NCBI GenBank assembly: GCA_964057225.1 | Contig: OZ059896.1 | Coordinates: forward strand, 3,162,001 to 3,226,000 | DNA from: Auanema rhodensis | Taxonomy: Eukaryota; Animalia; Nematoda | DNA: 64,000 nt | Direction: 5' to 3' | In this document: in pieces, positions 21,001 to 62,506 of the stretch | How positions within the stretch are numbered: the stretch's first letter is position 1 | How the letters are laid out: every line of letters starts with the position of its first letter | Position numbers and translations under genes: made by a program | The notes under the pieces: generated by a model | Seen by the model: the letters and a program-made list of their open reading frames with translations, nothing else | Database searches by the model: none | What the model was told of the DNA's origin: nothing

Positions 21001-24000
21001 ATTTTTCGGGAAAATTTTTGTCAAAATGTTTTTGGAAGCATTGTTGAGTGTACATGGAAACTCAACATACACTAATGCATCATTTTTCAAACGATCATAA
21101 CTAATTTTTGTATTGAGCGTTTCTCCATGTAGTATAGTGCATTCGATGCGGATTTTTAAGCTGCGTCGATCTGTGTTATCAGATTTGCGCTAGCTTGAAA
21201 ATGCACCGAGATATCAACTGATATAGGTTCACACTTATATCCTCGATTTTCACCGTGAAGAATTAATTTTTTTGTTGAATAACAATGTCCATCGTCTTTG
21301 TCTTGAAAAAAGGAATCTAAAAACATCTACTTTTTGTGAAATTATTTTGAAATTTTTCGGGAAAATTTTTGTCAAAATGTTTTTGGAAGCATTGTTGAGT
21401 GTACATGGAAACTCAACATACACTAATGCATCATTTTTCAAACGATCATAACTAATTTTTGTATTGAGCGTTTCTCCATGTAGTATAGTGCATTCGATGC
21501 GGATTTTTAAGCTGCGTCGATCTGTGTTATCAGATTTGCGCTAGCTTGAAAATGCACCGAGATATCAACTGATATAGGTTCACACTTATATCCTCGATTT
21601 TCACCGTGAAGAATTAATTTTTTTGTTGAATAACAATGTCCATCGTCTTTGTCTTGAAAAAAGGAATCTAAAAACATCTACTTTTTGTGAAATTATTTTG
21701 AAATTTTTCGGGAAAATTTTTGTCAAAATGTTTTTGGAAGCATTGTTGAGTGTACATGGAAACTCAACATACACTAATGCATCATTTTTCAAACGATCAT
21801 AACTAATTTTTGTATTGAGCGTTTCTCCATGTAGTATAGTGCATTCGATGCGGATTTTTAAGCTGCGTCGATCTGTGTTATCAGATTTGCGCTAGCTTGA
21901 AAATGCACCGAGATATCAACTGATATAGGTTCACACTTATATCCTCGATTTTCACCGTGAAGAATTAATTTTTTTGTTGAATAACAATGTCCATCGTCTT
22001 TGTCTTGAAAAAAGGAATCTAAAAACATCTACTTTTTGTGAAATTATTTTGAAATTTTTCGGGAAAATTTTTGTCAAAATGTTTTTGGAAGCATTGTTGA
22101 GTGTACATGGAAACTCAACATACACTAATGCATCATTTTTCAAACGATCATAACTAATTTTTGTATTGAGCGTTTCTCCATGTAGTATAGTGCATTCGAT
22201 GCGGATTTTTAAGCTGCGTCGATCTGTGTTATCAGATTTGCGCTAGCTTGAAAATGCACCGAGATATCAACTGATATAGGTTCACACTTATATCCTCGAT
22301 TTTCACCGTGAAGAATTAATTTTTTTGTTGAATAACAATGTCCATCGTCTTTGTCTTGAAAAAAGGAATCTAAAAACATCTACTTTTTGTGAAATTATTT
22401 TGAAATTTTTCGGGAAAATTTTTGTCAAAATGTTTTTGGAAGCATTGTTGAGTGTACATGGAAACTCAACATACACTAATGCATCATTTTTCAAACGATC
22501 ATAACTAATTTTTGTATTGAGCGTTTCTCCATGTAGTATAGTGCATTCGATGCGGATTTTTAAGCTGCGTCGATCTGTGTTATCAGATTTGCGCTAGCTT
22601 GAAAATGCACCGAGATATCAACTGATATAGGTTCACACTTATATCCTCGATTTTCACCGTGAAGAATTAATTTTTTCGTTGAATAACATTGTCCATCGTC
22701 TTTGTCTTGAAAAAAGGAATCTAAAAACATCTACTTTTTGTGAAATTATTTTGAAATTTTTCGGGAAAATTTTTGTCAAAATGTTTTTGGATGCATTGTT
22801 GAGTGTACATGAAAACTCAACATACACTAATGCATCATTTTTCAAACGATCATAACTAATTTTTGTATTGAGCGTTTCTCCATGTAGTATAGTGCATTCG
22901 ATGCGGATTTTTAAGCTGCGTCGATCTGTGTTATCAGATTTGCGCTAGCTTGAAAATGCACCGAGATATCAACTGATATAGGTTCACACTTATATCCTCG
23001 ATTTTCACCGTGAAGAATTAATTTTTTTGTTGAATAACAATGTCCATCGTCTTTGTCTTGAAAAAAGGAATCTAAAAACATCTACTTTTTGTGAAATTAT
23101 TTTGAAATTTTTCGGGAAAATTTTTGTCAAAATGTTTTTGGAAGCAATGTTGAGTGTACATGGAAACTCAACATACACTAATGCATCATTTTTCAAACGA
23201 TCATAACTAATTTTTGTATTGAGTGTTTCCCAATGTAGTATAGTGCATTCGATGTGGATTTTTAAGCTGCGTCGATCTGTGTTATCAGATTTGCGCTAGC
23301 TTAAAAATGCACCGAGATATCAACTGATATAAGTTCACACTTATATCCTCGATTTTCACCCTGAAGAATTAATTTTTTTGTTGAATAACAATGTCCATCG
23401 TCTTTGTCTTGAAAAAAGGAATCTAAAAACATCTACTTTTTGTGAAATTATTTTGAAATTTTTCGGGAAAATTTTTGTCAAAACGTTTTTGGAAGCAATG
23501 TTGAGTGTACATGGAAACTCAACATACACTAATGCATCATTTTTCAAACGATCATAACTAATTTTTGTATTGAGTGTTTCCCAATGTAGTATAGTGCATT
23601 CGATGTGGATTTTTAAGCTGCGTCGATCTGTGTTATCAGATTTGCGCTAGCTTAAAAATGCACCGAGATATCAACTGATATAAGTTCACACTTATATCCT
23701 CGATTTTCACCGTGAAGAATTAATTTTTTTGTTGAATACCAATGTCCATCGTCTTTGTCTTGAAAAAAGGAATCTAAAAACATCTACTTTTTGTGAAATT
23801 ATTTTGAAATTTTTCGGGAAAATTTTTGTCAAAATGTTTTTGGAAGCAATGTTGAGTGTACATGGAAACTCAACATACACTAATGCATCATTTTTCAAAC
23901 GATCATAACTAATTTTTGTATTGAGTGTTTCCCAATGTAGTATAGTGCATTCGATGTGGATTTTTAAGCTGCGTCGATCTGTGTTATCAGATTTGCGCTA

Positions 24001-27000
24001 GCTTGAAAATGCACCGAGATATCAACTGATATAGGTTCACACTTATATCCTCGATTTTCACCGTGAAGAATTAATTTTTTTGTTGAATAACAATGTCCAT
24101 CGTCTTTGTCTTGAAAAAAGGAATCTAAAAACATCTACTTTTTGTGAAATTATTTTGAAATTTTTCGGGAAAATTTTTGTCAAAATGTTTTTGGAAGCAA
24201 TGTTGAGTGTACATGGAAACTCAACATACACTAATGCATCATTTTTCAAACGATCATAACTAATTTTTGTATTGAGTGTTTCCCAATGTAGTATAGTGTA
24301 TTCGATTTGGATTTTTAAGCTGCGTCGATCTGTGTTATCAGATTTGCGCTAGCTTGAAAATGCACCGAGATATCAACTGATATAAGTTCACACTTATATC
24401 CTCGATTTTCACCGTGAAGAATTAATTTTTTTGTTGAATACCAATGTCCATCGTCTTTGTCTTGAAAAAAGGAATCTAAAAACATCTACTTTTTGTGAAA
24501 TTATTTTGAAATTTTTCGGGAAAATTTTTGTCAAAATGTTTTTGGAAGCAATGTTGAGTGTACATGGAAACTCAACATACACTAATGCATCATTTTTCAA
24601 ACGATCATAACTAATTTTTGTATTGAGTGTTTCCCAATGTAGTATAGTGCATTCGATGTGGATTTTTAAGCTGCGTCGATCTGTGTTATCAGATTTGCGC
24701 TAGCTTGAAAATGCACCGAGATATCAACTGATATAGGTTCACACTTATATCCTCGATTTTCACCGTGAAGAATTAATTTTTTTGTTGAATAACAATGTCC
24801 ATCGTCTTTGTCTTGAAAAAAGGAATCTAAAAACATCTACTTTTTGTGAAATTATTTTGAAATTTTTCGGGAAAATTTTTGTCAAAATGTTTTTGGAAGC
24901 AATGTTGAGTGTACATGGAAACTCAACATACACTAATGCATCATTTTTCAAACGATCATAACTAATTTTTGTATTGAGTGTTTCCCAATGTAGTATAGTG
25001 TATTCGATTTGGATTTTTAAGCTGCGTCGATCTGTGTTATCAGATTTGCGCTAGCTTGAAAATGCACCGAGATATCAACTGATATAGGTTCACACTTATA
25101 TCCTCGATTTTCACCGTGAAGAATTAATTTTTTTGTTGAATGACAATGTCCATCGTCTTTGTCTTGAAAAAAGGAATCTAAAAACATCTACTTTTTGTAA
25201 ATTTATTCTGAAATTTTTCGGGAAAATGTTTGTCAAAATGTTTTTGGAAGCAATGTTGAGTGTACATGGAAACTCAACATACACTAATGCATCATTTTTC
25301 AAACAATCATAACTAATTTTTGTATTGAGCGTTTCTTAATGTAGTATAGTACATTCGATGCGGATTTTTAAGCTGCGTCGATCTGTGTTATCAGATTTGC
25401 GCTAGCTTGAAAATGCACCGAGATATCAACTGATATAGGTTCACACTTATATCCTCGATTTTCACCGTGAAGAATTAATTTTTTTTTGTTGAATAACAAT
25501 GTCCATCGTCTTTGTCTTGAAAAGAGGAATCTAAAAACATCTACTTTTTGTGAAATTATTTTGAAATTTTTCGGGAAAATTTTTGTCAAAATGTTTTTGG
25601 AAGCATTGTTGAGTGTACATGGAAACTCAACATACACTAATGCATCATTTTTCAAACGATCATAACTAATTTTTGTATTGAGCGTTTCTCCATGTAGTAT
25701 AGTGCATTCGATGCGGATTTTTAAGCTGCGTCGATCTGTGTTATCAGATTTGCGCTAGCTTGAAAATGCACCGAGATATCAACTGATATAGGTTCACACT
25801 TATATCCTCGATTTTCACCGTGAAGAATTAATTTTTTTTTGTTGAATAACAATGTCCATCGTCTTTGTCTTGAAAAGAGGAATCTAAAAACATCTACTTT
25901 TTGTGAAATTATTTTGAAATTTTTCGGGAAAATTTTTGTCAAAATGTTTTTGGAAGCATTGTTGAGTGTACATGGAAACTCAACATACACTAATGCATCA
26001 TTTTTCAAACGATCATAACTAATTTTTGTATTGAGCGTTTCTTAATGTAGTATAGTACATTCGATGCGGATTTTTAAGCTGCGTCGATCTGTGTTATCAG
26101 ATTTGCGCTAGCTTAAAAATGAACCGAGATATCAACTGATATAGGTTCACACTTATATCCTCGATTTTCACCGTGAAGAATTAATTTTTTTTTGTTGAAT
26201 AACAATGTCCATCGTCTTTGTCTTGAAAAGAGGAATCTAAAAACATCTACTTTTTGTGAAATTATTTTGAAATTTTTCGGGAAAATTTTTGTCAAAATGT
26301 TTTTGGAAGCATTGTTGAGTGTACATGGAAACTCAACATACACTAATGCATCATTTTTCAAACGATCATAACTAATTTTTGTATTGAGCGTTTCTCCATG
26401 TAGTATAGTGCATTCGATGCGGATTTTTAAGCTGCGTCGATCTGTGTTATCAGATTTGCGCTAGCTTGAAAATGCACCGAGATATCAACTGATATAGGTT
26501 CACACTTATATCCTCGATTTTCACCGTGAAGAATTAATTTTTTTGTTGAATAACAATGTCCATCGTCTTTGTCTTGAAAAAAGGAATCTAAAAACATCTA
26601 CTTTTTGTGAAATTATTTTGAAATTTTTCGGGAAAATTTTTGTCAAAATGTTTTTGGAAGCATTGTTGAGTGTACATGGAAACTCAACATACACTAATGC
26701 ATCATTTTTCAAACGATCATAACTAATTTTTGTATTGAGCGTTTCTCCATGTAGTATAGTGCATTCGATGCGGATTTTTAAGCTGCGTCGATCTGTGTTA
26801 TCAGATTTGCGCTAGCTTGAAAATGCACCGAGATATCAACTGATATAGGTTCACACTTATATCCTCGATTTTCACCGTGAAGAATTAATTTTTTTGTTGA
26901 ATAACAATGTCCATCGTCTTTGTCTTGAAAAAAGGAATCTAAAAACATCTACTTTTTGTGAAATTATTTTGAAATTTTTCGGGAAAATTTTTGTCAAAAT

Positions 27001-30000
27001 GTTTTTGGAAGCATTGTTGAGTGTACATGGAAACTCAACATACACTAATGCATCATTTTTCAAACGATCATAACTAATTTTTGTATTGAGCGTTTCTCCA
27101 TGTAGTATAGTGCATTCGATGCGGATTTTTAAGCTGCGTCGATCTGTGTTATCAGATTTGCGCTAGCTTGAAAATGCACCGAGATATCAACTGATATAGG
27201 TTCACACTTATATCCTCGATTTTCACCGTGAAGAATTAATTTTTTTGTTGAATAACAATGTCCATCGTCTTTGTCTTGAAAAAAGGAATCTAAAAACATC
27301 TACTTTTTGTGAAATTATTTTGAAATTTTTCGGGAAAATTTTTGTCAAAATGTTTTTGGAAGCATTGTTGAGTGTACATGGAAACTCAACATACACTAAT
27401 GCATCATTTTTCAAACGATCATAACTAATTTTTGTATTGAGCGTTTCTTCATGTAGTATAGTGCATTCGATGCGGATTTTTAAGCTGCGTCGATCTGTGT
27501 TATCAGATTTGCGCTAGCTTGAAAATGCACCGAGATATCAACTGATATAGGTTCACACTTATATCCTCGATTTTCACCGTGAAGAATTAATTTTTTTGTT
27601 GAATAACAATGTCCATCGTCTTTGTCTTGAAAAAAGGAATCTAAAAACATCTACTTTTTGTGAAATTATTTTGAAATTTTTCGGGAAAATTTTTGTCAAA
27701 ATGTTTTTGGAAGCATTGTTGAGTGTACATGGAAACTCAACATACACTAATGCATCATTTTTCAAACGATCATAACTAATTTTTGTATTGAGCGTTTCTC
27801 CATGTAGTATAGTGCATTCGATGCGGATTTTTAAGCTGCGTCGATCTGTGTTATCAGATTTGCGCTAGCTTGAAAATGCACCGAGATATCAACTGATATA
27901 GGTTCACACTTATATCCTCGATTTTCACCGTGAAGAATTAATTTTTTTGTTGAATAACAATGTCCATCGTCTTTGTCTTGAAAAAAGGAATCTAAAAACA
28001 TCTACTTTTTGTGAAATTATTTTGAAATTTTTCGGGAAAATTTTTGTCAAAATGTTTTTGGAAGCATTGTTGAGTGTACATGGAAACTCAACATACACTA
28101 ATGCATCATTTTTCAAACGATCATAACTAATTTTTGTATTGAGCGTTTCTCCATGTAGTATAGTGCATTCGATGCGGATTTTTAAGCTGCGTCGATCTGT
28201 GTTATCAGATTTGCGCTAGCTTGAAAATGCACCGAGATATCAACTGATATAGGTTCACACTTATATCCTCGATTTTCACCGTGAAGAATTAATTTTTTTG
28301 TTGAATAACAATGTCCATCGTCTTTGTCTTGAAAAAAGGAATCTAAAAACATCTACTTTTTGTGAAATTATTTTGAAATTTTTCGGGAAAATTTTTGTCA
28401 AAATGTTTTTGGAAGCATTGTTGAGTGTACATGGAAACTCAACATACACTAATGCATCATTTTTCAAACGATCATAACTAATTTTTGTATTGAGCGTTTC
28501 TCCATGTAGTATAGTGCATTCGATGCGGATTTTTAAGCTGCGTCGATCTGTGTTATCAGATTTGCGCTAGCTTGAAAATGCACCGAGATATCAACTGATA
28601 TAGGTTCACACTTATATCCTCGATTTTCACCGTGAAGAATTAATTTTTTTGTTGAATAACAATGTCCATCGTCTTTGTCTTGAAAAAAGGAATCTAAAAA
28701 CATCTACTTTTTGTGAAATTATTTTGAAATTTTTCGGGAAAATTTTTGTCAAAATGTTTTTGGAAGCATTGTTGAGTGTACATGGAAACTCAACATACAC
28801 TAATGCATCATTTTTCAAACGATCAAAACTAATTTTTGTATTGAGCGTTTCTTCATGTAGTATAGTGCATTCGATGCGGATTTTTAAGCTGCGTCGATCT
28901 GTGTTATCAGATTTGCGCTAGCTTGAAAATGCACCGAGATATCAACTGATATAGGTTCACACTTATATCCTCGATTTTCACCGTGAAGAATTAATTTTTT
29001 TGTTGAATAACAATGTCCATCGTCTTTGTCTTGAAAAAAGGAATCTAAAAACATCTACTTTTTGTGAAATTATTTTGAAATTTTTCGGGAAAATTTTTGT
29101 CAAAATGTTTTTGGAAGCATTGTTGAGTGTACATGGAAACTCAACATACACTAATGCATCATTTTTCAAACGATCATAACTAATTTTTGTATTGAGCGTT
29201 TCTCCATGTAGTATAGTGCATTCGATGCGGATTTTTAAGCTGCGTCGATCTGTGTTATCAGATTTGCGCTAGCTTGAAAATGCACCGAGATATCAACTGA
29301 TATAGGTTCACACTTATATCCTCGATTTTCACCGTGAAGAATTAATTTTTTTGTTGAATAACAATGTCCATCGTCTTTGTCTTGAAAAAAGGAATCTAAA
29401 AACATCTACTTTTTGTGAAATTATTTTGAAATTTTTCGGGAAAATTTTTGTCAAAATGTTTTTGGAAGCAATGTTGAGTGTACATGGAAACTCAACATAC
29501 ACTAATGCATCATTTTTCAAACGATCATAACTAATTTTTGTATTGAGTGTTTCCCAATGTAGTATAGTGCATTCGATGTGGATTTTTAAGCTGCGTCGAT
29601 CTGTGTTATCAGATTTGCGCTAGCTTAAAAATGCACCGAGATATCAACTGATATAAGTTCACACTTATATCCTCGATTTTCACCCTGAAGAATTAATTTT
29701 TTTGTTGAATAACAATGTCCATCGTCTTTGTCTTGAAAAAAGGAATCTAAAAACATCTACTTTTTGTGAAATTATTTTGAAATTTTTCGGGAAAATTTTT
29801 GTCAAAACGTTTTTGGAAGCAATGTTGAGTGTACATGGAAACTCAACATACACTAATGCATCATTTTTCAAACGATCATAACTAATTTTTGTATTGAGTG
29901 TTTCCCAATGTAGTATAGTGCATTCGATGTGGATTTTTAAGCTGCGTCGATCTGTGTTATCAGATTTGCGCTAGCTTAAAAATGCACCGAGATATCAACT

Positions 30001-32424
30001 GATATAAGTTCACACTTATATCCTCGATTTTCACCGTGAAGAATTAATTTTTTTGTTGAATACCAATGTCCATCGTCTTTGTCTTGAAAAAAGGAATCTA
30101 AAAACATCTACTTTTTGTGAAATTATTTTGAAATTTTTCGGGAAAATTTTTGTCAAAATGTTTTTGGAAGCAATGTTGAGTGTACATGGAAACTCAACAT
30201 ACACTAATGCATCATTTTTCAAACGATCATAACTAATTTTTGTATTGAGTGTTTCCCAATGTAGTATAGTGCATTCGATGTGGATTTTTAAGCTGCGTCG
30301 ATCTGTGTTATCAGATTTGCGCTAGCTTGAAAATGCACCGAGATATCAACTGATATAGGTTCACACTTATATCCTCGATTTTCACCGTGAAGAATTAATT
30401 TTTTTGTTGAATAACAATGTCCATCGTCTTTGTCTTGAAAAAAGGAATCTAAAAACATCTACTTTTTGTGAAATTATTTTGAAATTTTTCGGGAAAATTT
30501 TTGTCAAAATGTTTTTGGAAGCAATGTTGAGTGTACATGGAAACTCAACATACACTAATGCATCATTTTTCAAACGATCATAACTAATTTTTGTATTGAG
30601 TGTTTCCCAATGTAGTATAGTGCATTCGATGTGGATTTTTAAGCTGCGTCGATCTGTGTTATCAGATTTGCGCTAGCTTAAAAATGCACCGAGATATCAA
30701 CTGATATAGGTTCACACTTATATCCTCGATTTTCACCCTGAAGAATTAATTTTTTTGTTGAATAACAATGTCCATCGTCTTTGTCTTGAAAAAAGGAATC
30801 TAAAAACATCTACTTTTTGTGAAATTATTTTGAAATTTTTCGGGAAAATTTTTGTCAAAATGTTTTTGGAAGCAATGTTGAGTGTACATGGAAACTCAAC
30901 ATACACTAATGCATCATTTTTCAAACGATCATAACTAATTTTTGTATTAAGCTTTTCTTAATGTAGTATAGTGCATTCGATGCGGATTTTTAAGCTGCGT
31001 CGATCTGTGTTATCAGATTTGCGCTAGCTTAAAAATGCACCGAGATATCAACTGATATAAGTTCACACTTATATCCTCGATTTTCACCCTGAAGAATTAA
31101 TTTTTTTGTTGAATAACAATGTCCATCGTCTTTGTCTTAAAAAAAGGAATCTAAAAACATCTACTTTTTGTGAAATTATTTTGAAATTTTTCGGGAAAAT
31201 TTTTGTCAAAATGTTTTTGGAAGCAATGTTGAGTGTACATGGAAACTCAACATACACTAATGCATCATTTTTCAAACGATCATAACTAATTTTTGTATTA
31301 AGCTTTTCTTAATGTAGTATAGTGCATTCGATGCGGATTTTTAAGCTGCGTCGATCTGTGTTATCAGATTTGCGCTAGCTTGAAAATGCACCGAGATATC
31401 AACTGATATAGGTTCACACTTATATCCTCGATTTTCACCGTGAAGAATTAATTTTTTTGTTGAATAACAATGTCCATCGTCTTTGTCTTGAAAAAAGGAA
31501 TCTAAAAACATCTACTTTTTGTGAAATTATTTTGAAATTTTTCGGGAAAATTTTTGTCAAAATGTTTTTGGAAGCAATGTTGAGTGTACATGGAAACTCA
31601 ACATACACTAATGCATCATTTTTCAAACGATCATAACTAATTTTTGTATTGAGTGTTTCCCAATGTAGTATAGTGCATTCGATGTGGATTTTTAAGCTGC
31701 GTCGATCTGTGTTATCAGATTTGCGCTAGCTTAAAAATGCACCGAGATATCAACTGATATAAGTTCACACTTATATCCTCGATTTTCACCCTGAAGAATT
31801 AATTTTTTTGTTGAATAACAATGTCCATCGTCTTTGTCTTGAAAAAAGGAATCTAAAAACATCTACTTTTTGTGAAATTATTTTGAAATTTTTCGGGAAA
31901 ATTTTTGTCAAAATGTTTTTGGAAGCAATGTTGAGTGTACATGGAAACTCAACATACACTAATGCATCATTTTTCAAACGATCATAACTAATTTTTGTAT
32001 TGAGTGTTTCCCAATGTAGTATAGTGCATTCGATGTGGATTTTTAAGCTGCGTCGATCTGTGTTATCAGATTTGCGCTAGCTTAAAAATGCACCGAGATA
32101 TCAACTGATATAAGTTCACACTTATATCCTCGATTTTCACCCTGAAGAATTAATTTTTTTGTTGAATAACAATGTCCATCGTCTTTGTCTTGAAAAAAGG
32201 AATCTAAAAACATCTACTTTTTGTGAAATTATTTTGAAATTTTTCGGGAAAATTTTTGTCAAAATGTTTTTGGATGCATTGTTGAGTGTACATGAAAACT
32301 CAACATACACTAATGCATCATTTTTCAAACGATCATAACTAATTTTTGTATTGAGCGTTTCTCCATGTAGTATAGTGCATTCGATGCGGATTTTTGAGCT
32401 GCGTCGATCTGTGTTATCAGATTT
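1..32424. repeat. Satellite array A: about 92 head-to-tail copies of a 351-bp monomer (353-bp variants), open at the left window edge
   Basis: Near-identical text recurs every 351 bp (ORF-track starts 178, 529, 880, ...). Monomers differ by a few SNPs and a T7/T9 tract. The array stops abruptly after ...TTATCAGATTT at 32424. Confidence 0.99.
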
Positions 32425-32443
32425 ACTTCAACTTCTAATCAAC

Positions 32444-32470
32444 AACCCAACGGCCCTCTTTAGGGCCACA
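32444..32470 (+). promoter_or_regulatory. Histone mRNA 3' stem-loop (SLBP/CDL-1 binding hairpin), orphaned from its CDS
   Basis: AACCCAAC-GGCCCT-CTTT-AGGGCC-ACA: canonical 6-bp stem and 4-nt loop with A/C-rich 5' flank and ACA 3' flank. C at loop position 1 is the form known from C. elegans histone genes. Confidence 0.9.
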
Positions 32471-32789
32471 TTTAAATTTGATGTATTCATAATGATTTAT
32501 AATATAATACTGTGTCTGTCTTGTCTTTTTTTGCTATGTAATGATAATTGATAGGATATGTTTCGCTGTTATGTAAAGAAGAATCCCTATCTTTGATACT
32601 CCATATCCATCTCTATTTTTTTTTATGAATTTCATTAATTATGCTTTCATGTTGATAACAACAACAGTGATCATATCTAATGCCTCACATGTTTCTATTC
32701 CACGTTTGTTCGCAAATAAACAGTTGTTTATGTTATTCTTATCGTTTATATAAAATTTAAATATACATTTCTAGAATTGAGCGGCAAAA

Positions 32790-32903
32790 TTAAGCGCCAA
32801 TATGCTTGGTGGCGATTACAATGGGTTTTTGCGCGGTGACCTCTACAGCACTAGTATATAACGGAGATGCTAGGGTTACTATTCAACACACAGCTTGATC
32901 AGC
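32790..32903 (+). promoter_or_regulatory. Probable histone H4 core promoter and 5'UTR
   Basis: CCAAT at 32797-32801, TATATAA at 32855-32861, CTATTCA initiator-like site at about 32879-32885, short A/C-rich leader, then the H4-like ATG at 32904. Confidence 0.6.
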
Positions 32904-32948
32904 ATGTCTGAACGTGGTAAAGGAGGAAAAGGTCTTGAATTTATATGA
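32904..32948 (+). pseudogene. H4: 5' fragment of histone H4 (truncated pseudogene)
   Basis: ATG TCT GAA CGT GGT AAA GGA GGA AAA GGT CTT GAA TTT ATA TGA = MSERGKGGKGLEFI*, versus the conserved H4 N-terminus MSGRGKGGKGLG (10/12; both differences are one G>A change from GGA). 'GKGL' favours H4 over H2A. Confidence 0.85.
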
Positions 32949-33015
32949 TTGAATAATAAAATAGTGATTGACTTATCTGTGCTATGTGCTTGTTGTTGAT
33001 TAGAAGTTGAAGTAA

Positions 33016-33271
33016 TGATGCTGACTACAACCGCTCTTTCTTTTTTTTTAAATGATATGATTGTTTAGATTTTCATTGCTTGCTTATGCTATTTTGAAAA
33101 TTTGAATATTCTTAGTGTTGTATTTTTTTTAATTTTTATTTTTTCTCTTTTTTTTTTCATATTTATACTTATATATATAAATATAATGTATATATTGAGA
33201 TTTAGCTAACTAGTTAATATATTAGCATTTGTACAGTTCGGCTTTCATTGACGTTAGGAATGTGGGCGTGG
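33016..33271. other. Unique AT-rich, low-complexity spacer between the histone relic and satellite B
   Basis: Poly-T and (TA)n tracts, no ORF, no evident similarity to either satellite. Confidence 0.7.
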
Positions 33272-33510
33272 TTTATTTACTCTAGTATACTCTATACATC
33301 TCCTGATAATTGTTTGATCTTATTTATATTTGTTGAAAATTCTTCACATTTTCTTATTGAAAGTGCTTCTTGATTTTTCTTCTTTGCTTTTATTATTTGA
33401 TTTTACAATGACTTGATATAACTTTCTTTTGTATCCTGTTCATGGAATGAATAATTATATACTGTAGTATAATTTGTACATCTCTTGATAATTGTTTGTT
33501 CTTATTTGTT
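33272..33510 (-). repeat. Degenerate, reverse-oriented edge copies (about 1.3 monomers) of satellite B
   Basis: Reverse complement matches satellite B with many mismatches (e.g. TTTTCTTATTGAAAGTGCTTCTTGA, GTATCCTGTTCATGGAAT, TGTACATCTCTTGATAATT). Confidence 0.9.
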
Positions 33511-36500
33511 ATCCATGAACAGGATACGAAAGAAAGTTATAACAAGTCATTGAAAAATTAAGTATTAAAAACAAAAAAAAAGTATCAAGAAGCATTTTCA
33601 GTAAGAAAACATGAAGAAATTTTAACAAATACAAATAAGAATGAGAAAATTATCAAGAGATGCATAACGTATTATAGAGTATCAGTAAACATTTAAAATA
33701 TGAACAGGATTCAAAAAAAGTAATATCAATTCATGGGAAAGTATTAAAAGCAAAGAAGAAGTATCAAGAAGGATTTTCAGTAAGAAAACATGAAGAAAGT
33801 TTAACAAATACAAAGAAGAATGAGAAAATTATCAAGAGATATATAACGTACTATAGAGTATCAGTAAACATTTTAAATATGAACAGGTTTCAAAAAAAGT
33901 TATAACAAGTCATGGTAAAATCAAGTTTTAAAAGCAAAGAAGAAGTATCAAGAAGGATTTTCAGCAAGAAAACATGAAGAAATTTTAACAAATACAAAGA
34001 AGAATGAGAAAATTATCGAAAGATGTACAAATTATACTAGAGTATCAGTAAACATTTAAAATATGAACAGGTTTCAACAAAAGTAATATCAAGTCATGAT
34101 AAAATCAAGTATTAAAAACAAAAAAAAAATATCAAGAAGCATTTTCAGTAAGAAAACATGAAGAAATTTTAACAAATACAAAGAAGAATGAGAAAATTAT
34201 CAAGAGATATATAACGTACTATAGAGTATCAGTAAACATTTTAAATATGAACAGGTTTCAAAAAAAGTTATAACAAGTCATGGTAAAATCAAGTTTTAAA
34301 AGCAAAGAAGAAGTATCAAGAAGGATTTTCAGCAAGAAAACATGAAGAAATTTTAACAAATACAAAGAAGAATGAGAAAATTATCGAAAGATGTACAAAT
34401 TATACTAGAGTATCAGTAAACATTTAAAATATGAACAGGTTTCAACAAAAGTAATATCAAGTCATGATAAAATCAAGTATTAAAAACAAAAAAAAAGTAT
34501 CAAGAAGCATTTTCAGTAAGAAAACATGAAGAAATTTTAACAAATACAAAGAAGAATGAAAAAATTATCAAGAGATGCATAACGTATTATAGAGTATCAG
34601 TAAACATTTTAAATATGAACAGGTTTCAAAAAAAGTTATAACAAGTCATGGTAAAATCAAGTTTTAAAAGCAAAGAAGAAGTATCAAGAAGGATTTTCAG
34701 TAAGAAAACATGAAGAAATTTTAACAAATACAAAGAAGAATGAGAAAATTATCGAAAGATGTACAAAGTATACTAGAGTATCAGTAAACATTTAAAATAT
34801 GAACAGGTTTCAACAAAAGTAATATCAAGTCATGATAAAATCAAGTATTAAAAACAAAAAAAAAGTATCAAGAAGCATTTTCAGTAAGAAAACATGAAGA
34901 AATTTTAACAAATACAAAGAAGAATGAGAAAACTATCAAGAGATATATAACGTACTATAGAGTATCAGTAAACATTTTAAATATGAACAGGTTTCAAAAA
35001 AAGTTATAACAAGTCATGGTAAAATCAAGTTTTAAAAGCAAAGAAGAAGTATCAAGAAGGATTTTCAGCAAGAAAACATGAAGAAATTTTAACAAATACA
35101 AAGAAGAATGAGAAAATTATCGAAAGATGTACAAATTATACTAGAGTATCAGTAAACATTTAAAATATGAACAGGTTTCAACAAAAGTAATATCAAGTCA
35201 TGATAAAATCAAGTATTAAAAACAAAAAAAAAGTATCAAGAAGCATTTTCAGTAAGAAAACATGAAGAAATTTTAACAAATACAAAGAAGAATGAAAAAA
35301 TTATCAAGAGATGCATAACGTATTATAGAGTATCAGTAAACATTTTAAATATGAACAGGTTTCAAAAAAAGTTATAACAAGTCATGGTAAAATCAAGTTT
35401 TAAAAGCAAAGAAGAAGTATCAAGAAGGATTTTCAGTAAGAAAACATGAAGAAATTTTAACAAATACAAAGAAGAATGAGAAAATTATCGAAAGATGTAC
35501 AAAGTATACTAGAGTATCAGTAAACATTTAAAATATGAACAGGTTTCAACAAAAGTAAAATCAAGTCATGATAAAATCAAGTATTAAAACAAAAAAAAAG
35601 TATCAAGAAGCATTTTCAGTAAGAAAACATGAAGAAATTTTAACAAATACAAAACAGAATGACAAAATTATCGAAAGATGTACAAAGTATACTAGAGTAT
35701 CAGTAAACATTTAAAATATGAACAGGTTTCAACAAAAGTAAAATCAAGTCATGATAAAATCAAGTATTAAAAACAAAAAAAAAGTATCAAGAAGCATTTT
35801 CAGTAAGAAAACAGGAAGAAATTTTAACAAATACAAAAAAGAATGAGAAAATTATCAAGAGATGTACAAAATATACTAGAGTAAAATATTATTTATTCCA
35901 TGAACATGATACGAAAGAAAGTTATAACAAGTCATGGTAAAATCAAGTATTAAAAACAAAAAAAAGTATCAAGAAGCATCTTCAGTAGGAAAACATGAAG
36001 AAATTTTAACAAATACAAAAAAGAATGAGAAAATTATCGAAAGATGCATAACATATTATAGAGTATCAGTAAACATTTGGAATATGAACAGGTTTCAAAA
36101 AAAGTTATAACAAGTCATGGTAAAATCAAGTTTTAAAAGCAAAGAAGAAGTATCAAGAAGGATTTTCAGTAAGAAAACATGAAGAAATTTCAACAAATAC
36201 AAAAAAGAATGAGAAAATTATCGAAAGATGCATAACATATTATAGAGTATCAGTAAACATTTGGAATATGAACAGGTTTCAAAAAAAGTTATAACAAGTC
36301 ATGGTAAAATCAAGTTTTAAAAGCAAAGAAGAAGTATCAAGAAGGATTTTCAGTAAGAAAACATGAAGAAATTTTAACAAATACAAAGAAGAATGAAAAA
36401 ATTATCAAGAGATGCATAACGTATTATAGAGTATCAGTAAACATTTTAAATATGAACAGGTTTCAAAAAAAGTTATAACAAGTCATGGTAAAATCAAGTT

Positions 36501-38436
36501 TTAAAAGCAAAGAAGAAGTATCAAGAAGGATTTTCAGTAAGAAAACATGAAGAAATTTTAACAAATACAAAGAAGAATGAGAAAATTATCGAAAGATGTA
36601 CAAATTATACTAGAGTATCAGTAAACATTTAAAATATGAACAGGTTTCAACAAAAGTAATATCAAGTCATGATAAAATCAAGTATTAAAAACAAAAAAAA
36701 AGTATCAAGAAGGATTTTCAGTAAGAAAACATGAAGAAATTTTAACAAATACAAAGAAGAATGAAAAAATTATCAAGAGATGCATAACGTATTATAGAGT
36801 ATCAGTAAACATTTTAAATATGAACAGGTTTCAAAAAAAGTTATAACAAGTCATGGTAAAATCAAGTTTTAAAAGCAAAGAAGAAGTATCAAGAAGGATT
36901 TTCAGTAAGAAAACATGAAGAAATTTTAACAAATACAAAAAAGAATGAGAAAATTATCGAAAGATGCATAACATATTATAGAGTATCAGTAAACATTTAA
37001 AATATGAACAGGTTTCAAAAAAAGTAATATCATTTCATGGGGAAGTATTAAAAGCAAAGAAGAAGTATCAAGAAGGATTTTCAATAAGAAAACATGAAGA
37101 AATTTTAACAAATACAAAGAAGAATGAGAAAATTATCAAGAAATGTATAACGTATTATAGAGTATCAGTAAACATTTAAAATATGAACAGGTTTCAAAAA
37201 AAGTAATATCAATTCATGGGAAAATCGAGTTTTAAAAGCAAAGAAGAAGTATCAAGAAGGATTTTCAGTAAGAAAACATGAAGAAATTTTCAAGAATACA
37301 AAGAAGAATGAGAAAATTATCAAGAGATGTACAAAATATACTAGAGTAAAATATTATTTATTCCATGAACATGATACGAAAGAAAGTTATGACAAGTCAT
37401 GGTAAAATCAAGTATTAAAAACAAAAAAAAGTATCAAGAAGCATTTTCAGTAAGAAAACATGAAGAAATTTTAACAAATACAAAAAAGAATGAGAAAATT
37501 ATCGAAAGATGCTTAACATATTATAGAGTATCAGTAAACATTTAAAATATGAACAGGTTTCAAAAAAAGTAATATCATTTCATGGGGAAGTATTAAAAGC
37601 AAAGAAGAAGTATCAAGAAGGATTTTCAATAAGAAAACATGAAGAAATTTTAACAAATACAAAAAAGAATGAGAAAATTATCGAAAGATGCATAACATAT
37701 TATAGAGTATCAGTAAACATTTGGAATATGAACAGGTTTCAAAAAAAGTTATAACAAGTCATGGTAAAATCAAGTTTTAAAAGCAAAGAAGAAGTATCAA
37801 GAAGGATTTTCAGTAAGAAAACATGAAGAAATTTTAACAAATACAAAGAAGAATGAAAAAATTATCAAGAGATGCATAACGTATTATAGAGTATCAGTAA
37901 ACATTTTAAATATGAACAGGTTTCAAAAAAAGTTATAACAAGTCATGGTAAAATCAAGTTTTAAAAGCAAAGAAGAAGTATCAAGAAGGATTTTCAGTAA
38001 GAAAACATGAAGAAATTTTAACAAATACAAATAAGAATGAGAAAATTATCAAGAAATGTACAAAGTATACTAGAGTAAACTATTATTTATTCCATGAACA
38101 GGATACGAAAGAAAGTTATAACAAGTCATGGTAAAATCAAGTATTAAAAACAAAAAAAAAGTATCAAGAAGCATTTTCAGTAAGAAAACATGAAGAAATT
38201 TTAACAAATACAAATAAGAATGAGAAAATTATCAAGAAATGTACAAAGTATACTAGAGTAAATAATTATTTACTACATGAACAAGATACGAAAGAAAGTA
38301 ATATCAAGTCATGATAAAATCAAGTATTAAAAACAAAGAAGAAGTATCAAGTAGGATTTTCAATAAGAAAACATGAAGAAATTTTAACAAATACAAAGAA
38401 GAATGAGAAAATTATCAAGAAATGTATAACGTATTA

Positions 38437-38918
38437 GGCGCTGGTATTGTTTCGCCCACCCCCCCCCCCTAATAATCAGAGAGTTAACATTAGAGCGCGC
38501 TTATAACATTTTGGGGACACACCAGCTTTGCATAAACTAGCGGGAGTGCTCTATCCCAGATCCGGGGGGTCTGGGGGGGTATCCCCCCCAGATAGAGAAA
38601 GCTTCAACAAAATTTAGAAGTATTAAACTCGCAGAAATGAGACTGTATTTTCGAGTAAATAACGCATGATCTAAGATAACATTTTGGGCACGCACTAGCT
38701 TTGCATAAACCAGCGGGAGTGCTCTATCCCAAATCCGGGGGGTCTGGGGGGGTATCCCCCCCAGATAGAGAGAGCTTCAACAAAATTTAAAAGTATTAAA
38801 AGTATCAGAGAGAGCACTCCCACTCGCAGAGATGAGACTCTTTATTTTCAGGTAAAAAACGCATGCGCTCTAATGTTAACTCTTAGGGGGGGGGGGTGGG
38901 CGAAACGATACCAGCCCC
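38437..38918. mobile_element. Non-autonomous DNA transposon (MITE), 482 bp, 8-bp TSD ACGTATTA; Merlin-like by termini (superfamily tentative)
   Basis: TSD at 38429-38436 and 38919-38926, present once in empty monomers. TIRs GG(C/G)GCTGGTAT(T/C)GTTTCGCCCAC11TA..AGAGTTAACATTAGAGCGC at 38437-38498 and 38865-38918. Interior is two diverged direct repeats (38503-38675, 38676-38864); no ORF. Confidence 0.93.
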
Positions 38919-41149
38919 ACGTATTATAGAGTATCAGTAAACATTTAAAATATGAACAGGTTTCAAAAAAAGTAATATCATTTCATGGGGAAGTATTAAA
39001 AGCAAAGAAGAAGTATCAAGAAGGATTTTCAATAAGAAAACATGAAGAAATTTTAACAAATACAAAGAAGAATGAGAAAATTATCAAGAAATGTATAACG
39101 TATTATAGAGTATCAGTAAACATTTAAAATATGAACAGGTTTCAAAAAAAGTAATATCAATTCATGGGAAAATCGAGTTTTAAAAGCAAAGAAGAAGTAT
39201 CAAGAAGGATTTTCAGTAAGAAAACATGAAGAAATTTTTAAGAATACAAAGAAGAATGAGAAAATTATCAAGAAATGTACAAAGTATACTAGAGTAAATA
39301 ATTATTTACTACATGAACAAGATACGAAAGAAAGTAATATCAAGTCATGATAAAATCAAGTTTTAAAAACAAAAAAAAGTATCAAGAAGCATTTTCAGTA
39401 AGAAAACATGAAGAAATTTTAACAAATACAAATAAGAATGAGAAAATTATCAAGAGATATATAACGTACTATAGAGTATCAGTAAACATTTTAAATATGA
39501 ACAGGTTTCAAAAAAAGTTATAACAAGTCATAGTAAAATCAAGTTTTAAAAGCAAAGAAGAAGTATCAAGAAGGATTTTCAGTAAGAAAACATGAAGAAA
39601 TTTTAACAAATACAAAAAAGAATGACAAAATTATCGAAAGATGTACAAAGTATACTAGAGTATCAGTAAACATTTAAAATATGAACAGGTTTCAACAAAA
39701 GTAAAATCAAGTCATGATAAAATCAAGTATTAAAAACAAAAAAAAAGTATCAAGAAGCATTTTCAGTAAGAAAACAGGAAGAAATTTTAACAAATACAAA
39801 AAAGAATGAGAAAATTATCAAGAGATGTACAAAATATACTAGAGTAAAATATTATTTATTCCATGAACATGATACGAAAGAAAGTTATAACAAGTCATGG
39901 TAAAATCAAGTATTAAAAACAAAAAAAAGTATCAAGAAGCATCTTCAGTAGGAAAACATGAAGAAATTTTAACAAATACAAAAAAGAATGAGAAAATTAT
40001 CGAAAGATGCATAACATATTATAGAGTATCAGTAAACATTTGGAATATGAACAGGTTTCAAAAAAAGTTATAACAAGTCATGGTAAAATCAAGTTTTAAA
40101 AGCAAAGAAGAAGTATCAAGAAGGATTTTCAGTAAGAAAACATGAAGAAATTTCAACAAATACAAAAAAGAATGAGAAAATTATCGAAAGATGCATAACA
40201 TATTATAGAGTATCAGTAAACATTTGGAATATGAACAGGTTTCAAAAAAAGTTATAACAAGTCATGGTAAAATCAAGTTTTAAAAGCAAAGAAGAAGTAT
40301 CAAGAAGGATTTTCAGTAAGAAAACATGAAGAAATTTTAACAAATACAAAGAAAAATGAAAAAATTATCAAGAGATGCATAACGTATTATAGAGTATCAG
40401 TAAACATTTTAAATATGAACAGGTTTCAAAAAAAGTTATAACAAGTCATGGTAAAATCAAGTTTTAAAAGCAAAGAAGAAGTATCAAGAAGGATTTTCAG
40501 TAAGAAAACATGAAGAAATTTTAACAAATACAAAGAAGAATGAGAAAATTATCGAAAGATGTACAAATTATACTAGAGTATCAGTAAACATTTAAAATAT
40601 GAACAGGTTTCAACAAAAGTAATATCAAGTCATGATAAAATCAAGTATTAAAAACAAAAAAAAAGTATCAAGAAGGATTTTCAGTAAGAAAACATGGAGA
40701 AATTTTAACAAATACAAAGAAGAATGAAAAAATTATCAAGAGATGCATAACGTATTATAGAGTATCAGTAAACATTTTAAATATGAACAGGTTTCAAAAA
40801 AAGTTATAACAAGTCATGGTAAAATCAAGTTTTAAAAGCAAAGAAGAAGTATCAAGAAGGATTTTCAGTAAGAAAACATGAAGAAATTTTAACAAATACA
40901 AAAAAGAATGAGAAAATTATCGAAAGATGCATAACATATTATAGAGTATCAGTAAACATTTAAAATATGAACAGGTTTCAAAAAAAGTAATATCATTTCA
41001 TGGGGAAGTATTAAAAGCAAAGAAGAAGTATCAAGAAGGATTTTCAATAAGAAAACATGAAGAAATTTTAACAAATACAAAGAAGAATGAGAAAATTATC
41101 AAGAAATGTATAACGTATTATAGAGTATCAGTAAACATTTAAAATATGA

Positions 41150-62100: not shown

Positions 62101-62265
62101 TTCATGGGGAAGTATTAAAAGCAAAGAAGAAGTATCAAGAAGGATTTTCAATAAGAAAACATGAAGAAATTTCAACAAATACAAAGAAGAATGAGAAAAT
62201 TATCAAGAGATGTATAACATATTATAGAGTATCAGTAAACATTTAAAATATGAACAGGTTTCAAA
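41150..62265 (+). repeat. About 10.9/10.2-kb tandem duplication within satellite B
   Basis: ORF-track hits at 48405/49315/50042/51669 recur at +10216 (58621/59531/60258/61885). Upstream of the MITE site the offset is 10888 (41174 vs 52062). Boundaries approximate. Confidence 0.85.
42400..42884. mobile_element. Second copy of the same MITE (485 bp), duplicated together with its flanks
   Basis: Same as copy 1 by eye except C13/G12 versus C11/G11 homopolymers. Same TSD (42392-42399, 42885-42892) and same flanking monomer variants, 3963 bp downstream. Confidence 0.93.
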
Positions 62266-62506
62266 AAAGGTAATATCATTTCATGGGGAAGTATTAAAAG
62301 CAAAGAAGAAGTAACAAGAAGGATTTTCAATAAGAAAACATGAAGAAATTTCAACAAATACAAATAAGAATGAGAAAATTATCAAGAGATATATAACGTA
62401 CTATAGAGTATCAGTAAACATTTTAAATATGAACAGGTTTCAAAAAAAGTTATAACAAGTCATGGTAAAATCAAGTTTTAAAAGCAAAGAAGAAGTATCA
62501 AGAAGG

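What the first reader, a model, noticed from the sequence alone, without database searches (positions are those of the whole stretch)
32423..33015. Histone-locus relic (3' stem-loop + H4 promoter + H4 5' end) boxed by a perfect inverted repeat at the seam between two satellite arrays
Seen: almost the only unique DNA in 64 kb is a 593-bp cassette. It runs from the 3' stem-loop of one histone gene, through a spacer and TATA promoter, into 12 codons of H4, and both ends are a perfect 24-bp inverted repeat. Known: stem-loops mark replication-dependent histone genes, which are clustered and shed orphons. Inference: either a TIR-bounded element that captured a histone intergenic spacer (ends can be read TA|CTTCAAC...GTTGAAG|TA, compatible with a TA TSD) or a fold-back/template-switch scar where a histone cluster was rearranged between satellites. 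Regulatory parts are retained while coding parts are lost.
Basis: partly seen in the sequence, partly recalled or inferred. Interest (0 to 1): 0.75.

Follow-up and report, generated by a model that had tools for sequence, protein, structure and literature searches.

The report
Dead histone fragment at satellite seam
This is a broken, non-mobile piece of the worm's own histone gene repeat, stuck where two satellite arrays meet; its "terminal inverted repeat" is a 19-24-base repair scar copied backwards from sequence about 550 bases away, and the whole junction was later duplicated at least 14 times, so it is an ordinary though tidy rearrangement fossil.

Summary
There is a perfect 24-nt inverted repeat (32423-32446 / 32992-33015), a histone 3' stem-loop, an H4 promoter and 11 H4 codons, all at the seam between a 351-bp and a 184-bp satellite.

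The transposon reading fails.
- The right arm is native histone-cluster sequence. It lies inside an uninterrupted 336-bp match (32938-33273) to the H4-to-H2B spacer of the tandem H2B-H2A-H3-H4 repeat on contig C3.
- The 24-mer occurs once per native unit, in one orientation.
- All its other copies in the genome belong to this same junction, with identical flanks.

The left arm is 19 nt copied in reverse from that spacer. It is joined to the satellite through a 2-nt overlap and to the H3 3' UTR through a 3-nt overlap. This fits a microhomology-primed template switch or snap-back repair.

A blunt 360-bp deletion removed the rest of H4 and its stem-loop.

The cassette is not unique. There are at least 14 full copies (97-100% identical) on C4 and C5, in two subtypes. 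One of each subtype brackets every 184-bp satellite block in inverted orientation.

A genuine MITE with 8-bp target duplications lies in the same window and serves as a positive control.

The scan met this relic before on other DNA (s1-373189). The genome is probably Auanema rhodense, and the region is probably germline-restricted. Interest is low to moderate.

The parts
1..32424 (+). 351-bp satellite array (92 copies, 98% matches). It ends at the same monomer phase in all 14 full copies of the junction.
32423..32446 (+). Left arm of the perfect 24-nt inverted repeat. Bases 32425-32443 (19 nt) can only come from the inverted H4-H2B spacer. TT (32423-32424) is shared with the satellite. AAC (32444-32446) is shared with the native H3 3' UTR.
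32444..32493 (+). Remnant of the histone H3 3' UTR, starting 18 nt after the native H3 stop codon. It holds the stem-loop (stem 32452-32457 / 32462-32467, loop 32458-32461).
32494..32903 (+). H3-to-H4 intergenic spacer with the H4 upstream region (CCAAT 32797-32801, TATA 32855-32861). Over 32444-32937, substitution identity is 94.5% to native C3 units and 95.1% to the C1 fragments. The relic shares four indel states with C1 against C3.
32904..32937 (+). H4 5' end: ATG plus 11 codons and one base, with Gly3 changed to Glu. The open frame runs on into spacer and stops at 32946-32948 (14 codons).
32937..32938 (.). Blunt deletion junction. It removes 360 bp of the native unit: the last two bases of H4 codon 12 through the stop (278 nt), plus 82 nt of 3' flank including the H4 stem-loop.
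32938..33273 (+). H4-to-H2B intergenic spacer, colinear with the native C3 unit (91.6% identity). It ends about 75 nt upstream of the native H2B ATG, just before its CCAAT box.
32992..33015 (+). Right arm of the inverted repeat. This is the native position and orientation of the 24-mer inside the spacer, and the template for the left arm.
33274..33640 (.). Start of the 184-bp satellite. About one monomer lies in the T-rich orientation, then the array flips to the A-rich orientation. The flip forms 129-nt inverted arms (33318-33446 / 33512-33640) and causes a spurious MIR837 match.
33515..62514 (+). 184-bp satellite block. It flips again at about 62510. The partner relic, in inverted orientation, lies beyond the window at C4:3233642-3234341.

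Best explanation
The region 32425-33273 is a dead fragment of one unit of the genome's own tandem core-histone repeat, an orphon-like relic. That repeat has the order H2B-H2A-H3-H4 with all genes on one strand.

The relic runs from 18 nt after the H3 stop codon to about 75 nt upstream of the next H2B start. It lacks 360 bp that held the H4 body and the H4 stem-loop. It sits between a 351-bp and a 184-bp satellite.

The inverted repeat is not a transposon end. Its right arm is ordinary spacer sequence in its native place. Its left arm is a 19-nt reverse copy of that sequence, laid down when the broken H3 3' UTR end was joined to the satellite.

Inferred mechanism:
1. The 3' end of the break, ending in the complement of AAC, primed on the AAC at the edge of the spacer 24-mer on the same strand. 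This is a snap-back or template switch.
2. It was extended by about 21 nt.
3. It was released and joined to the satellite end through a 2-nt overlap.
This is the pattern of polymerase-theta end joining or microhomology-mediated replication template switching.

The finished junction was then duplicated in inverted orientation, giving subtypes A and B. The module [351-sat | relic | 184-sat block | inverted relic | 351-sat] was copied at least five times along 2.3 Mb of contig C4, and the junction occurs at least once on C5.

The relic most likely has no function and marks the history of these satellite blocks.

Shown: origin, junction anatomy, copy distribution. Inferred: the repair enzyme or pathway, the order of events, and lack of function.
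For: Native donor: C3:18.51-18.545 Mb holds 10 units of 3688 bp with intact H2B, H2A, H3 and H4.

BLAST of the window against one native unit:
- 32444-32509 matches the H3 3' end at 100%.
- 32509-32937 matches the H3-H4 spacer plus the H4 5' end.
- 32938-33273 matches the H4-H2B spacer at 91.6%, with exactly 360 bp of native sequence missing between the last two segments.

The 24-mer matches each native unit once. That site is where the right arm aligns, and it has the right arm's orientation, so the left arm is inverted relative to it.

Base-level junctions show the TT and AAC overlaps.

A genome-wide pattern search at up to 2 mismatches gave 45 hits. Ten are in native units. All the rest are in relic copies on C4 and C5.

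All 14 full copies align through both flanks with the same breakpoints. Every copy of the spacer part starts at the same deletion junction.

The relic copies fall into two subtypes, and each inverted pair holds one A and one B.

A true MITE in the same window (36-nt TIRs, 8-bp target duplications, dispersed copies on five or more contigs) shows what mobility looks like with these tools.

Templated insertions with minimal junction homology are the documented polymerase-theta footprint in C. elegans, including natural isolates (PMC4032859). A templated-extension-in-cis mode is described in PMC4912351 (abstract).
Against: - The template lies 545 nt from the insert, or about 905 nt if the H4 deletion came later. 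The C. elegans footprints are described as having templates close to the break.
- Overlaps of 2 and 3 nt in AT-rich DNA are only mildly unlikely by chance.
- The H4 deletion junction is blunt, so not all junctions carry the same signature.
- The order of events cannot be recovered, because no intermediate copies survive.
- Lack of function is assumed, not tested. An earlier scan note reports weak transcription across the relic.
Confidence: 0.8

Rival explanations
1. The 593-bp box is a TIR-bounded non-autonomous DNA transposon that captured a histone intergenic spacer and inserted at a TA.
For: Literal perfect 24-nt terminal inverted repeat. The ends can be read with TA on both sides.
Against: - The right end is not a discontinuity. 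Native spacer homology runs uninterrupted from 32938 to 33273, through and beyond the arm.
- The right-hand TA is native sequence.
- The 24-mer occurs only in native units and in copies of this one junction.
- All copies share identical flanks.
- A real MITE in the window behaves quite differently.
Confidence: 0.02
2. The left arm is the stump of a once much longer fold-back (inverted) duplication of the histone fragment. A later, separate deletion fused the stump to the 351-bp satellite and trimmed it to 24 nt.
For: - Fold-back junctions are common here. The 184-bp satellite flips 300 bp away with 129-nt arms and again at about 62510.
- The relics themselves form large inverted pairs.
- The AAC overlap fits a fold-back priming site.
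Against: It needs two events where one suffices. No copy keeps a longer left arm. The TT overlap at the satellite side fits release and rejoining in one event equally well.
Confidence: 0.15
3. The relic is functional. The retained H4 promoters of the inverted relic pairs fire convergently into the 184-bp satellite block, or the 24-nt repeat forms a hairpin in a read-through RNA. Either would yield double-stranded RNA and small RNAs that mark this satellite chromatin.
For: - CCAAT and TATA are intact and nearly identical to the native promoter.
- Relics face each other across every 184-bp block.
- An earlier scan note (s1-373189) reports weak transcription across the fragment.
Against: - Promoter conservation is no better than that of the surrounding neutral spacer. 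Overall relic-to-native divergence over 32444-32937 is about 5.5%.
- The coding stub is already mutated (Gly3Glu) and the stem-loop needed for histone mRNA processing is deleted.
- Not tested here.
Confidence: 0.05
4. The junction is an assembly misjoin between a histone contig and satellite contigs.
For: Satellite-rich regions are hard to assemble, and no reads could be inspected here.
Against: The same junctions recur in at least 14 places. They carry two subtypes of substitutions and indels and lie in different large-scale contexts. A single misjoin cannot produce that.
Confidence: 0.02

Closest known systems
Histone orphons: solitary, dispersed pieces derived from tandem histone repeats, first described in sea urchin and Drosophila (cited from my own knowledge: Childs et al. 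1981)
   Same: Derived from a tandem core-histone repeat unit. Located away from the parent cluster (C4/C5 versus C3). Keeps spacer and promoter sequence colinear with the parent unit.
   Different: Heavily truncated, with no complete gene. Carries an internal 360-bp deletion and an inverted templated insert. It is not solitary: it was amplified at least 14-fold as part of a satellite module.
Polymerase-theta-mediated end joining footprints (deletions with templated insertions) in C. elegans (PMC4032859, PMC4490562; snap-back mode PMC4912351)
   Same: An insert identical to nearby sequence, with short overlaps (2 and 3 nt) at both sides of the insert, in a rhabditid nematode germline genome.
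   Different: The template is 545 nt or more away and in reverse orientation. The described footprints use templates next to the break. The enzyme cannot be assigned for a historical event.
Fold-back inversions, serial template switching (FoSTeS/MMBIR) and DUP-TRP/INV-DUP structures
   Same: Inverted copy joined through microhomology. Several orientation flips within 1.2 kb. Large inverted pairs around the satellite block. A neighbouring scan note describes a DUP-TRP/INV-DUP at the window's end.
   Different: The inverted segment here is only 19-24 nt, which is at the small end for such events.
MITEs / TIR DNA transposons
   Same: Only the literal presence of a perfect terminal inverted repeat.
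   Different: No target-site duplication, no dispersed copies, and no sequence discontinuity at the right end. The arm is host histone-spacer sequence.

Membership tests
TIR DNA transposon / MITE | Terminal inverted repeats at both ends | tested here: met
   24 nt, 100% complementary. The right arm is native spacer sequence, though.
TIR DNA transposon / MITE | Target-site duplication flanking the ends | tested here: not met
   The right-hand TA is part of the native spacer. The left-hand T belongs to the satellite and the A to the insert.
TIR DNA transposon / MITE | Dispersed copies at unrelated sites with different flanks | tested here: not met
   All 14 full copies share both flanks and breakpoints. 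The 24-mer is found only in native units and in these copies. The MITE control in the same window does show dispersed copies with 8-bp target duplications.
Histone orphon / histone-cluster pseudogene fragment | Colinear homology to a unit of the tandem histone repeat | tested here: met
   32444-32937 and 32938-33273 are colinear with the C3 unit, apart from one 360-bp deletion.
Histone orphon / histone-cluster pseudogene fragment | Located outside the parent cluster | tested here: met
   Relics lie on C4 (1.96-5.45 Mb) and C5. The parent-type cluster lies on C3 at 18.5 Mb.
Histone orphon / histone-cluster pseudogene fragment | Solitary copy | tested here: not met
   At least 14 full and at least 5 partial copies, amplified with the satellites.
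Replication-dependent histone 3' stem-loop (Rfam RF00032) | Score at or above the Rfam gathering threshold | tested here: not met
   28.3 bits against a threshold of 34. All four stem-loops of the intact native unit also fall below it (28.3-33.9). The native H3 stem-loop scores the same 28.3, and the relic is 100% identical to native H3 3' sequence over the first 66 nt from 32444. So it is a true homologue of a working element.
Replication-dependent histone 3' stem-loop (Rfam RF00032) | Sits downstream of a histone coding sequence | tested here: not met
   The H3 coding sequence and the first 18 nt of its 3' UTR are gone and replaced by the insert and satellite.
Polymerase-theta end-joining scar (templated insertion) | Insert identical to nearby flanking sequence | tested here: met
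   19-24 nt identical to 32992-33015 in reverse complement.
Polymerase-theta end-joining scar (templated insertion) | At least 1 nt of homology at the junctions | tested here: met
   TT at the satellite side and AAC at the H3 UTR side.
Polymerase-theta end-joining scar (templated insertion) | Template in close proximity to the break | tested here: inconclusive
   The template is 545 nt away now. Published footprints stress close proximity.
Polymerase-theta end-joining scar (templated insertion) | Dependence on the polq-1 gene | not testable with these tools
   This is a historical germline event.

The most novel reading that the evidence does not exclude
The inverted relic pairs are not passive. 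Their intact H4 promoters, facing each other across every 184-bp satellite block in DNA that is probably germline-restricted, would drive convergent transcription. That would feed a small-RNA or heterochromatin pathway acting on the satellites, and so a dead histone promoter would have been co-opted as a satellite transcription unit.
Probability: 0.05. Interest if true: 0.6.

Novelty: new member of a known kind. Interest (0 to 1): 0.25.

Why it matters
The case shows at base resolution how a fragment of an essential multigene repeat becomes trapped in satellite DNA, and how a short repair scar can imitate a transposon end.

The relic is also a practical marker. Its two subtypes and fixed breakpoints let one trace how the 351-bp and 184-bp satellite blocks were built, by one inverted duplication followed by copying of 15-39-kb modules. 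These blocks are probably the terminal, germline-restricted blocks of Auanema rhodense autosomes.

It does not reveal a new kind of element or mechanism.

Tried and rejected
- **Mobile cassette.** Rejected after the own-genome DNA and pattern searches and the flank comparison.
- **Second native histone cluster as donor** (C3:5.26-5.34 Mb, unit 3545 bp). Rejected: only the stem-loops and the H4 start match, and it holds no 24-mer and no spacer homology.
- **C1 histone fragments as direct parent of the relic.** Rejected. They lack the H4-H2B spacer, and the relic lacks their H3 and H4 coding parts. Substitutions form a three-way split of 8 (C4 relic), 14 (C1) and 17 (C3).
- **Satellites derived from the histone unit.** Neither satellite produced a match to a native unit in the BLAST of window 31900-34200, apart from a 28-nt low-complexity hit.
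- **Extension of the inverted repeat beyond 24 nt.** None on either side, by reading.
- **MIR837, MIR827 and MIR7996 matches at 33404-33552.** Far below threshold. They are explained by the palindromic flip of the 184-bp satellite.
- **Bacterial promoter and terminator scan.** Uninformative for a eukaryote: 6 sites found against 5.6 expected.
- **Satellite-containing own-genome query.** The query including 33273-33520 was swamped by satellite hits and was repeated without the satellite.
- **Supplementary tables of the A. rhodense preprint.** Not held, so the satellite names AT-1/AT-2 could not be matched to the 351-bp and 184-bp units.
Full report
**What is in the sequence**

The window is G000:C4:3162001-3226000.
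- A 351-bp satellite (92 copies, 98% matches) fills 1-32424.
- A 184-bp satellite is called from 33515 to 62514, and a 179-bp-period array in the opposite orientation runs to the window's end.
- Between them, the repeat finder reports one perfect 24-nt inverted repeat, at 32423-32446 and 32992-33015, with 545 nt between the arms.
- Rfam finds the histone 3' stem-loop (RF00032) at 32447-32493 with 28.3 bits and E 1.6e-5.
- An ATG at 32904 opens a reading frame that reads as H4 for 11 codons, with Gly3 changed to Glu.

A perfect 24-nt inverted match within 600 bp is far beyond chance.

**Whose genome**

The histone proteins encoded in the native clusters are of the rhabditid nematode type; this is my own comparison with C. 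elegans from memory. G000 has 180,911,798 bases in 112 contigs. A 2026 preprint reports a 180.9-Mb PacBio HiFi germline assembly of Auanema rhodense. About 61% of that genome, mostly multi-megabase tandem-repeat blocks at autosome ends and centres, is eliminated from somatic cells (10.64898/2026.08.27.747507). Earlier notes of this scan also point to Auanema.

I take the genome to be that assembly and the window to lie in a terminal, germline-restricted repeat block. Both points are inferences. The preprint's repeat tables were not available. The contig is not human.

**The donor**

Contig C3 carries a tandem array of 10 units of 3688 bp at 18.51-18.545 Mb. Each unit has intact H2B, H2A, H3 and H4 on one strand, in that order.

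BLAST of window 31900-34200 against three of these units (locus L021, C3:18526000-18535500) gives a simple colinear picture:
- 32444-32509 matches the H3 3' end at 100%.
- 32509-32937 matches the H3-H4 spacer, the H4 upstream region and the H4 start at 90% including gaps. Substitution identity over 32444-32937 is 94.5%.
- 32938-33273 matches the spacer between H4 and the next H2B at 91.6%.

Between the last two segments, exactly 360 bp of the native unit are missing. They comprise the last two bases of H4 codon 12 through the stop (278 nt) and 82 nt of 3' flank, which includes the H4 stem-loop.

The histone homology ends at 33273. That is about 75 nt upstream of the native H2B ATG, just before its CCAAT box. 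There the 184-bp satellite begins.

The stem-loop in the relic is therefore that of H3. Its sub-threshold Rfam score is a property of this lineage: the four stem-loops of an intact native unit score 28.3-33.9 bits, and the native H3 one scores the same 28.3.

A second native cluster (C3:5.26-5.34 Mb, unit 3545 bp) shares only the stem-loops and the H4 start with the relic, and is not the donor type.

**The inverted repeat**

The 24-mer occurs once per native unit, in one orientation. That site is inside the H4-H2B spacer, exactly where the right arm aligns. The right arm is thus native sequence in its native context, in the middle of an uninterrupted 336-bp match. It is not an element end.

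The left arm is the novelty, and the base-level comparison shows the following:
- Satellite homology runs through 32424.
- Homology to the inverted spacer runs from 32423 to 32446.
- Homology to the native H3 3' UTR starts at 32444, which is 18 nt after the H3 stop.

So 19 nt (32425-32443) can only come from the inverted spacer. They are flanked by a 2-nt overlap (TT) with the satellite and a 3-nt overlap (AAC) with the H3 UTR. The repeat does not extend beyond 24 nt on either side.

**Mechanism (inferred)**

The geometry works out strand by strand.
1. A break just upstream of the H3 stem-loop leaves a 3' end whose last three bases are the complement of AAC.
2. After resection, that end can pair with the AAC at the inner edge of the spacer 24-mer on the same strand.
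3. Extension by about 21 nt copies the 24-mer in reverse.
4. Release and pairing of the last two bases with the satellite end then gives exactly the observed sequence.

This is the pattern of templated insertion with minimal junction homology. It is the documented footprint of polymerase-theta end joining in C. elegans mutants and natural isolates (PMC4032859; PMC4490562). It also matches the 'templated extension in cis' mode of the enzyme (PMC4912351, abstract).

The caveat is distance. The template is 545 nt away, or about 905 nt if the H4 deletion is younger. A replication-type template switch (FoSTeS/MMBIR), or a fold-back duplication trimmed later, is about equally good. I cannot tell these apart.

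The H4 deletion junction is blunt. The junctions of the sister fragments on C1 show 0 and 2 nt of overlap. Short-homology end joining in general is therefore the safest statement.

**Not unique, and not mobile**

An own-genome search with the cassette plus 24 nt of left flank and 85 nt of right flank returns 14 full-length matches at 97-100%. Thirteen are on C4 between 1.96 and 5.45 Mb, and one is on C5. There are also partial copies.
- With 1.5 kb of flank on each side, every full copy aligns through both flanks with the same breakpoints.
- All 19 copies of the complete spacer part outside the native cluster start at the same deletion junction; a further partial copy (C4:5255212) lacks that end. 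No intermediate with an intact H4 survives.
- A pattern search for the 24-mer at up to 2 mismatches finds 45 sites. Ten are in the native units and all the rest are in these relic copies. The reversed control pattern finds none.

As a positive control, the same window holds a genuine MITE at 38437-38918 and 42400-42885. It is 482 bp long with 36-nt TIRs. Full-length or partial copies lie on C1, C3, C4, C5, C6 and C7. The four C6 loci examined each have different flanks and their own 8-bp target-site duplication.

**Large-scale architecture**

The relic copies fall into two subtypes, A and B, that differ by 6-12 substitutions and a 12-bp indel over 849 bp. On C4 they come as inverted pairs 15-39 kb apart, and each pair holds one A and one B:

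| Pair | First relic | Second relic |
|---|---|---|
| 1 (this window) | 3194400(+), type A | 3233642(-), type B |
| 2 | 3842982(+), type B | 3858401(-), type A |
| 3 | 4047703(+), type B | 4062503(-), type A |
| 4 | 4727658(+), type B | 4747236(-), type A |
| 5 | 5438951(+), type B | 5453914(-), type A |

The partner of this window's relic was fetched. It is 98.8% identical over 32300-33600 in inverted orientation, including the 351-bp satellite flank. The 184-bp satellite fills the space between the two relics, with several orientation flips and one partial relic.

The simplest history has three steps:
1. One founding junction formed.
2. One inverted duplication gave subtypes A and B.
3. The whole module [351-sat | relic | 184-sat block | inverted relic | 351-sat] was copied repeatedly, in both orientations.

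Because the 351-bp satellite is itself inverted on the two sides of a module, the module has no defined ends. It is a segmental palindrome, not an insertion.

The recurrence of the junction in many places, with two variant types, also argues strongly against a misjoin. Reads could not be checked.

**Sister fragments on C1**

At C1:3.37-3.47 Mb, the 351-bp satellite alternates with a roughly 1-kb histone fragment. The fragment holds H3 from about codon 37 to its stop, the stem-loop, the spacer and H4 codons 1 to about 63. Where copies are adjacent, the period is about 3.4-3.7 kb.

Over 32444-32937 these fragments are 95.1% identical to the relic. They share four indel states with it against the native C3 units. 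Substitutions split three ways: 8 on the C4 relic branch, 14 on the C1 branch and 17 on the C3 branch.

Neither fragment can derive from the other, since each keeps parts that the other lacks. Both therefore descend from an older histone unit that came to lie next to the 351-bp satellite. This also shows that nothing favours 'regulatory' over coding parts.

**Function**

I see no evidence of function.
- The promoter elements are intact, but no better conserved than the surrounding spacer.
- The coding stub is mutated and runs into a stop after 14 codons.
- The stem-loop that would process an H4 message is deleted.

An earlier scan report on copies about 0.8 Mb away (s1-373189) describes the same relic. 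It reports weak transcription that starts upstream of the TATA box, with no small RNAs shown. I could not test RNA here. I leave the co-option idea, convergent promoters feeding double-stranded RNA, at about 5%.

**Verdict**

- The transposon reading is refuted, and the rearrangement-scar reading is supported.
- This is a new example of known things: a histone orphon-like relic, a templated-insertion scar and palindromic satellite amplification. The same scan had already met it on other DNA.
- Interest is low to moderate. It is useful mainly as a marker for reconstructing how these satellite blocks grew.

Noticed in passing
window 38437-38918 and 42400-42885: A genuine 482-bp MITE sits inside the 184-bp satellite. 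It has 36-nt TIRs with G/C homopolymer runs and an internal duplicated core. The two window copies are 99.5% identical and 3963 bp apart, so they were copied along with the satellite. Full-length or partial copies lie on C1, C3, C4, C5, C6 and C7. The four C6 loci examined each have their own 8-bp target-site duplication (hAT-like length). A 63-nt piece of it is itself tandemly repeated on C17, C15, C10 and C8.
   Followed up: partly
window 33318-33446 / 33512-33640: The 184-bp satellite starts with about one monomer in the T-rich orientation and then flips, forming 129-nt inverted arms around a 65-nt loop. This causes spurious plant-miRNA matches (MIR837, 45 bits against a threshold of 117). 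Most relic copies share this flip.
   Followed up: partly
L022 (G000:C1:3425000-3434999); array C1:3.37-3.47 Mb: Higher-order repeat in which the 351-bp satellite alternates with a roughly 1-kb H3/H4 fragment (H3 lacking about its first 36 codons, H4 cut after about codon 63). The period is about 3.4-3.7 kb where copies are adjacent. Some copies carry a 15-bp direct duplication right at the H4|satellite junction, giving an open frame of 94 instead of 89 aa.
   Followed up: partly
G000:C4, relic pairs at 3.19/3.23, 3.84/3.86, 4.05/4.06, 4.73/4.75 and 5.44/5.45 Mb: Each 184-bp satellite block is bracketed by one A-type and one B-type relic in inverted orientation. Three modules (3.84, 4.05 and 5.44 Mb) have relics identical to each other, so blocks of 15 kb or more were copied very recently over distances of 0.2-1.4 Mb.
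   Followed up: partly
L024 5394-6200 (G000:C4:3231394-3232200) and four other C4 sites; C4:1964543 and 2098532: Partial relic copies occur too. Five start at window-equivalent 32705 and lie about 1.85 kb inside the B-type relics. Two cover only window-equivalent 32400-32778 and lie about 930 bp upstream of the full copies at 1.96 and 2.10 Mb. Their junctions were not examined.
   Followed up: no
L023 (G000:C3:5265000-5274000); cluster C3:5.26-5.34 Mb: A second tandem core-histone cluster has a unit of about 3545 bp, identical H4 protein and diverged spacers. It holds at least 11 intact H4 copies plus one lacking codons 1-11 (C3:5262653). Spacing is irregular (3.5-44 kb), so other DNA is interspersed.
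   Followed up: no
G000:C7:8905298-8905647: A solitary H4 pseudogene with in-frame TAA and TAG stops (85-98% identity in two pieces). It shares no similarity with the relic region used as query (window 32300-33600).
   Followed up: no
window 62510-64000: The 184-bp satellite flips to the T-rich orientation with a 179-bp period at 95% matches. An earlier first-reader note reads this as a DUP-TRP/INV-DUP structure.
   Followed up: no
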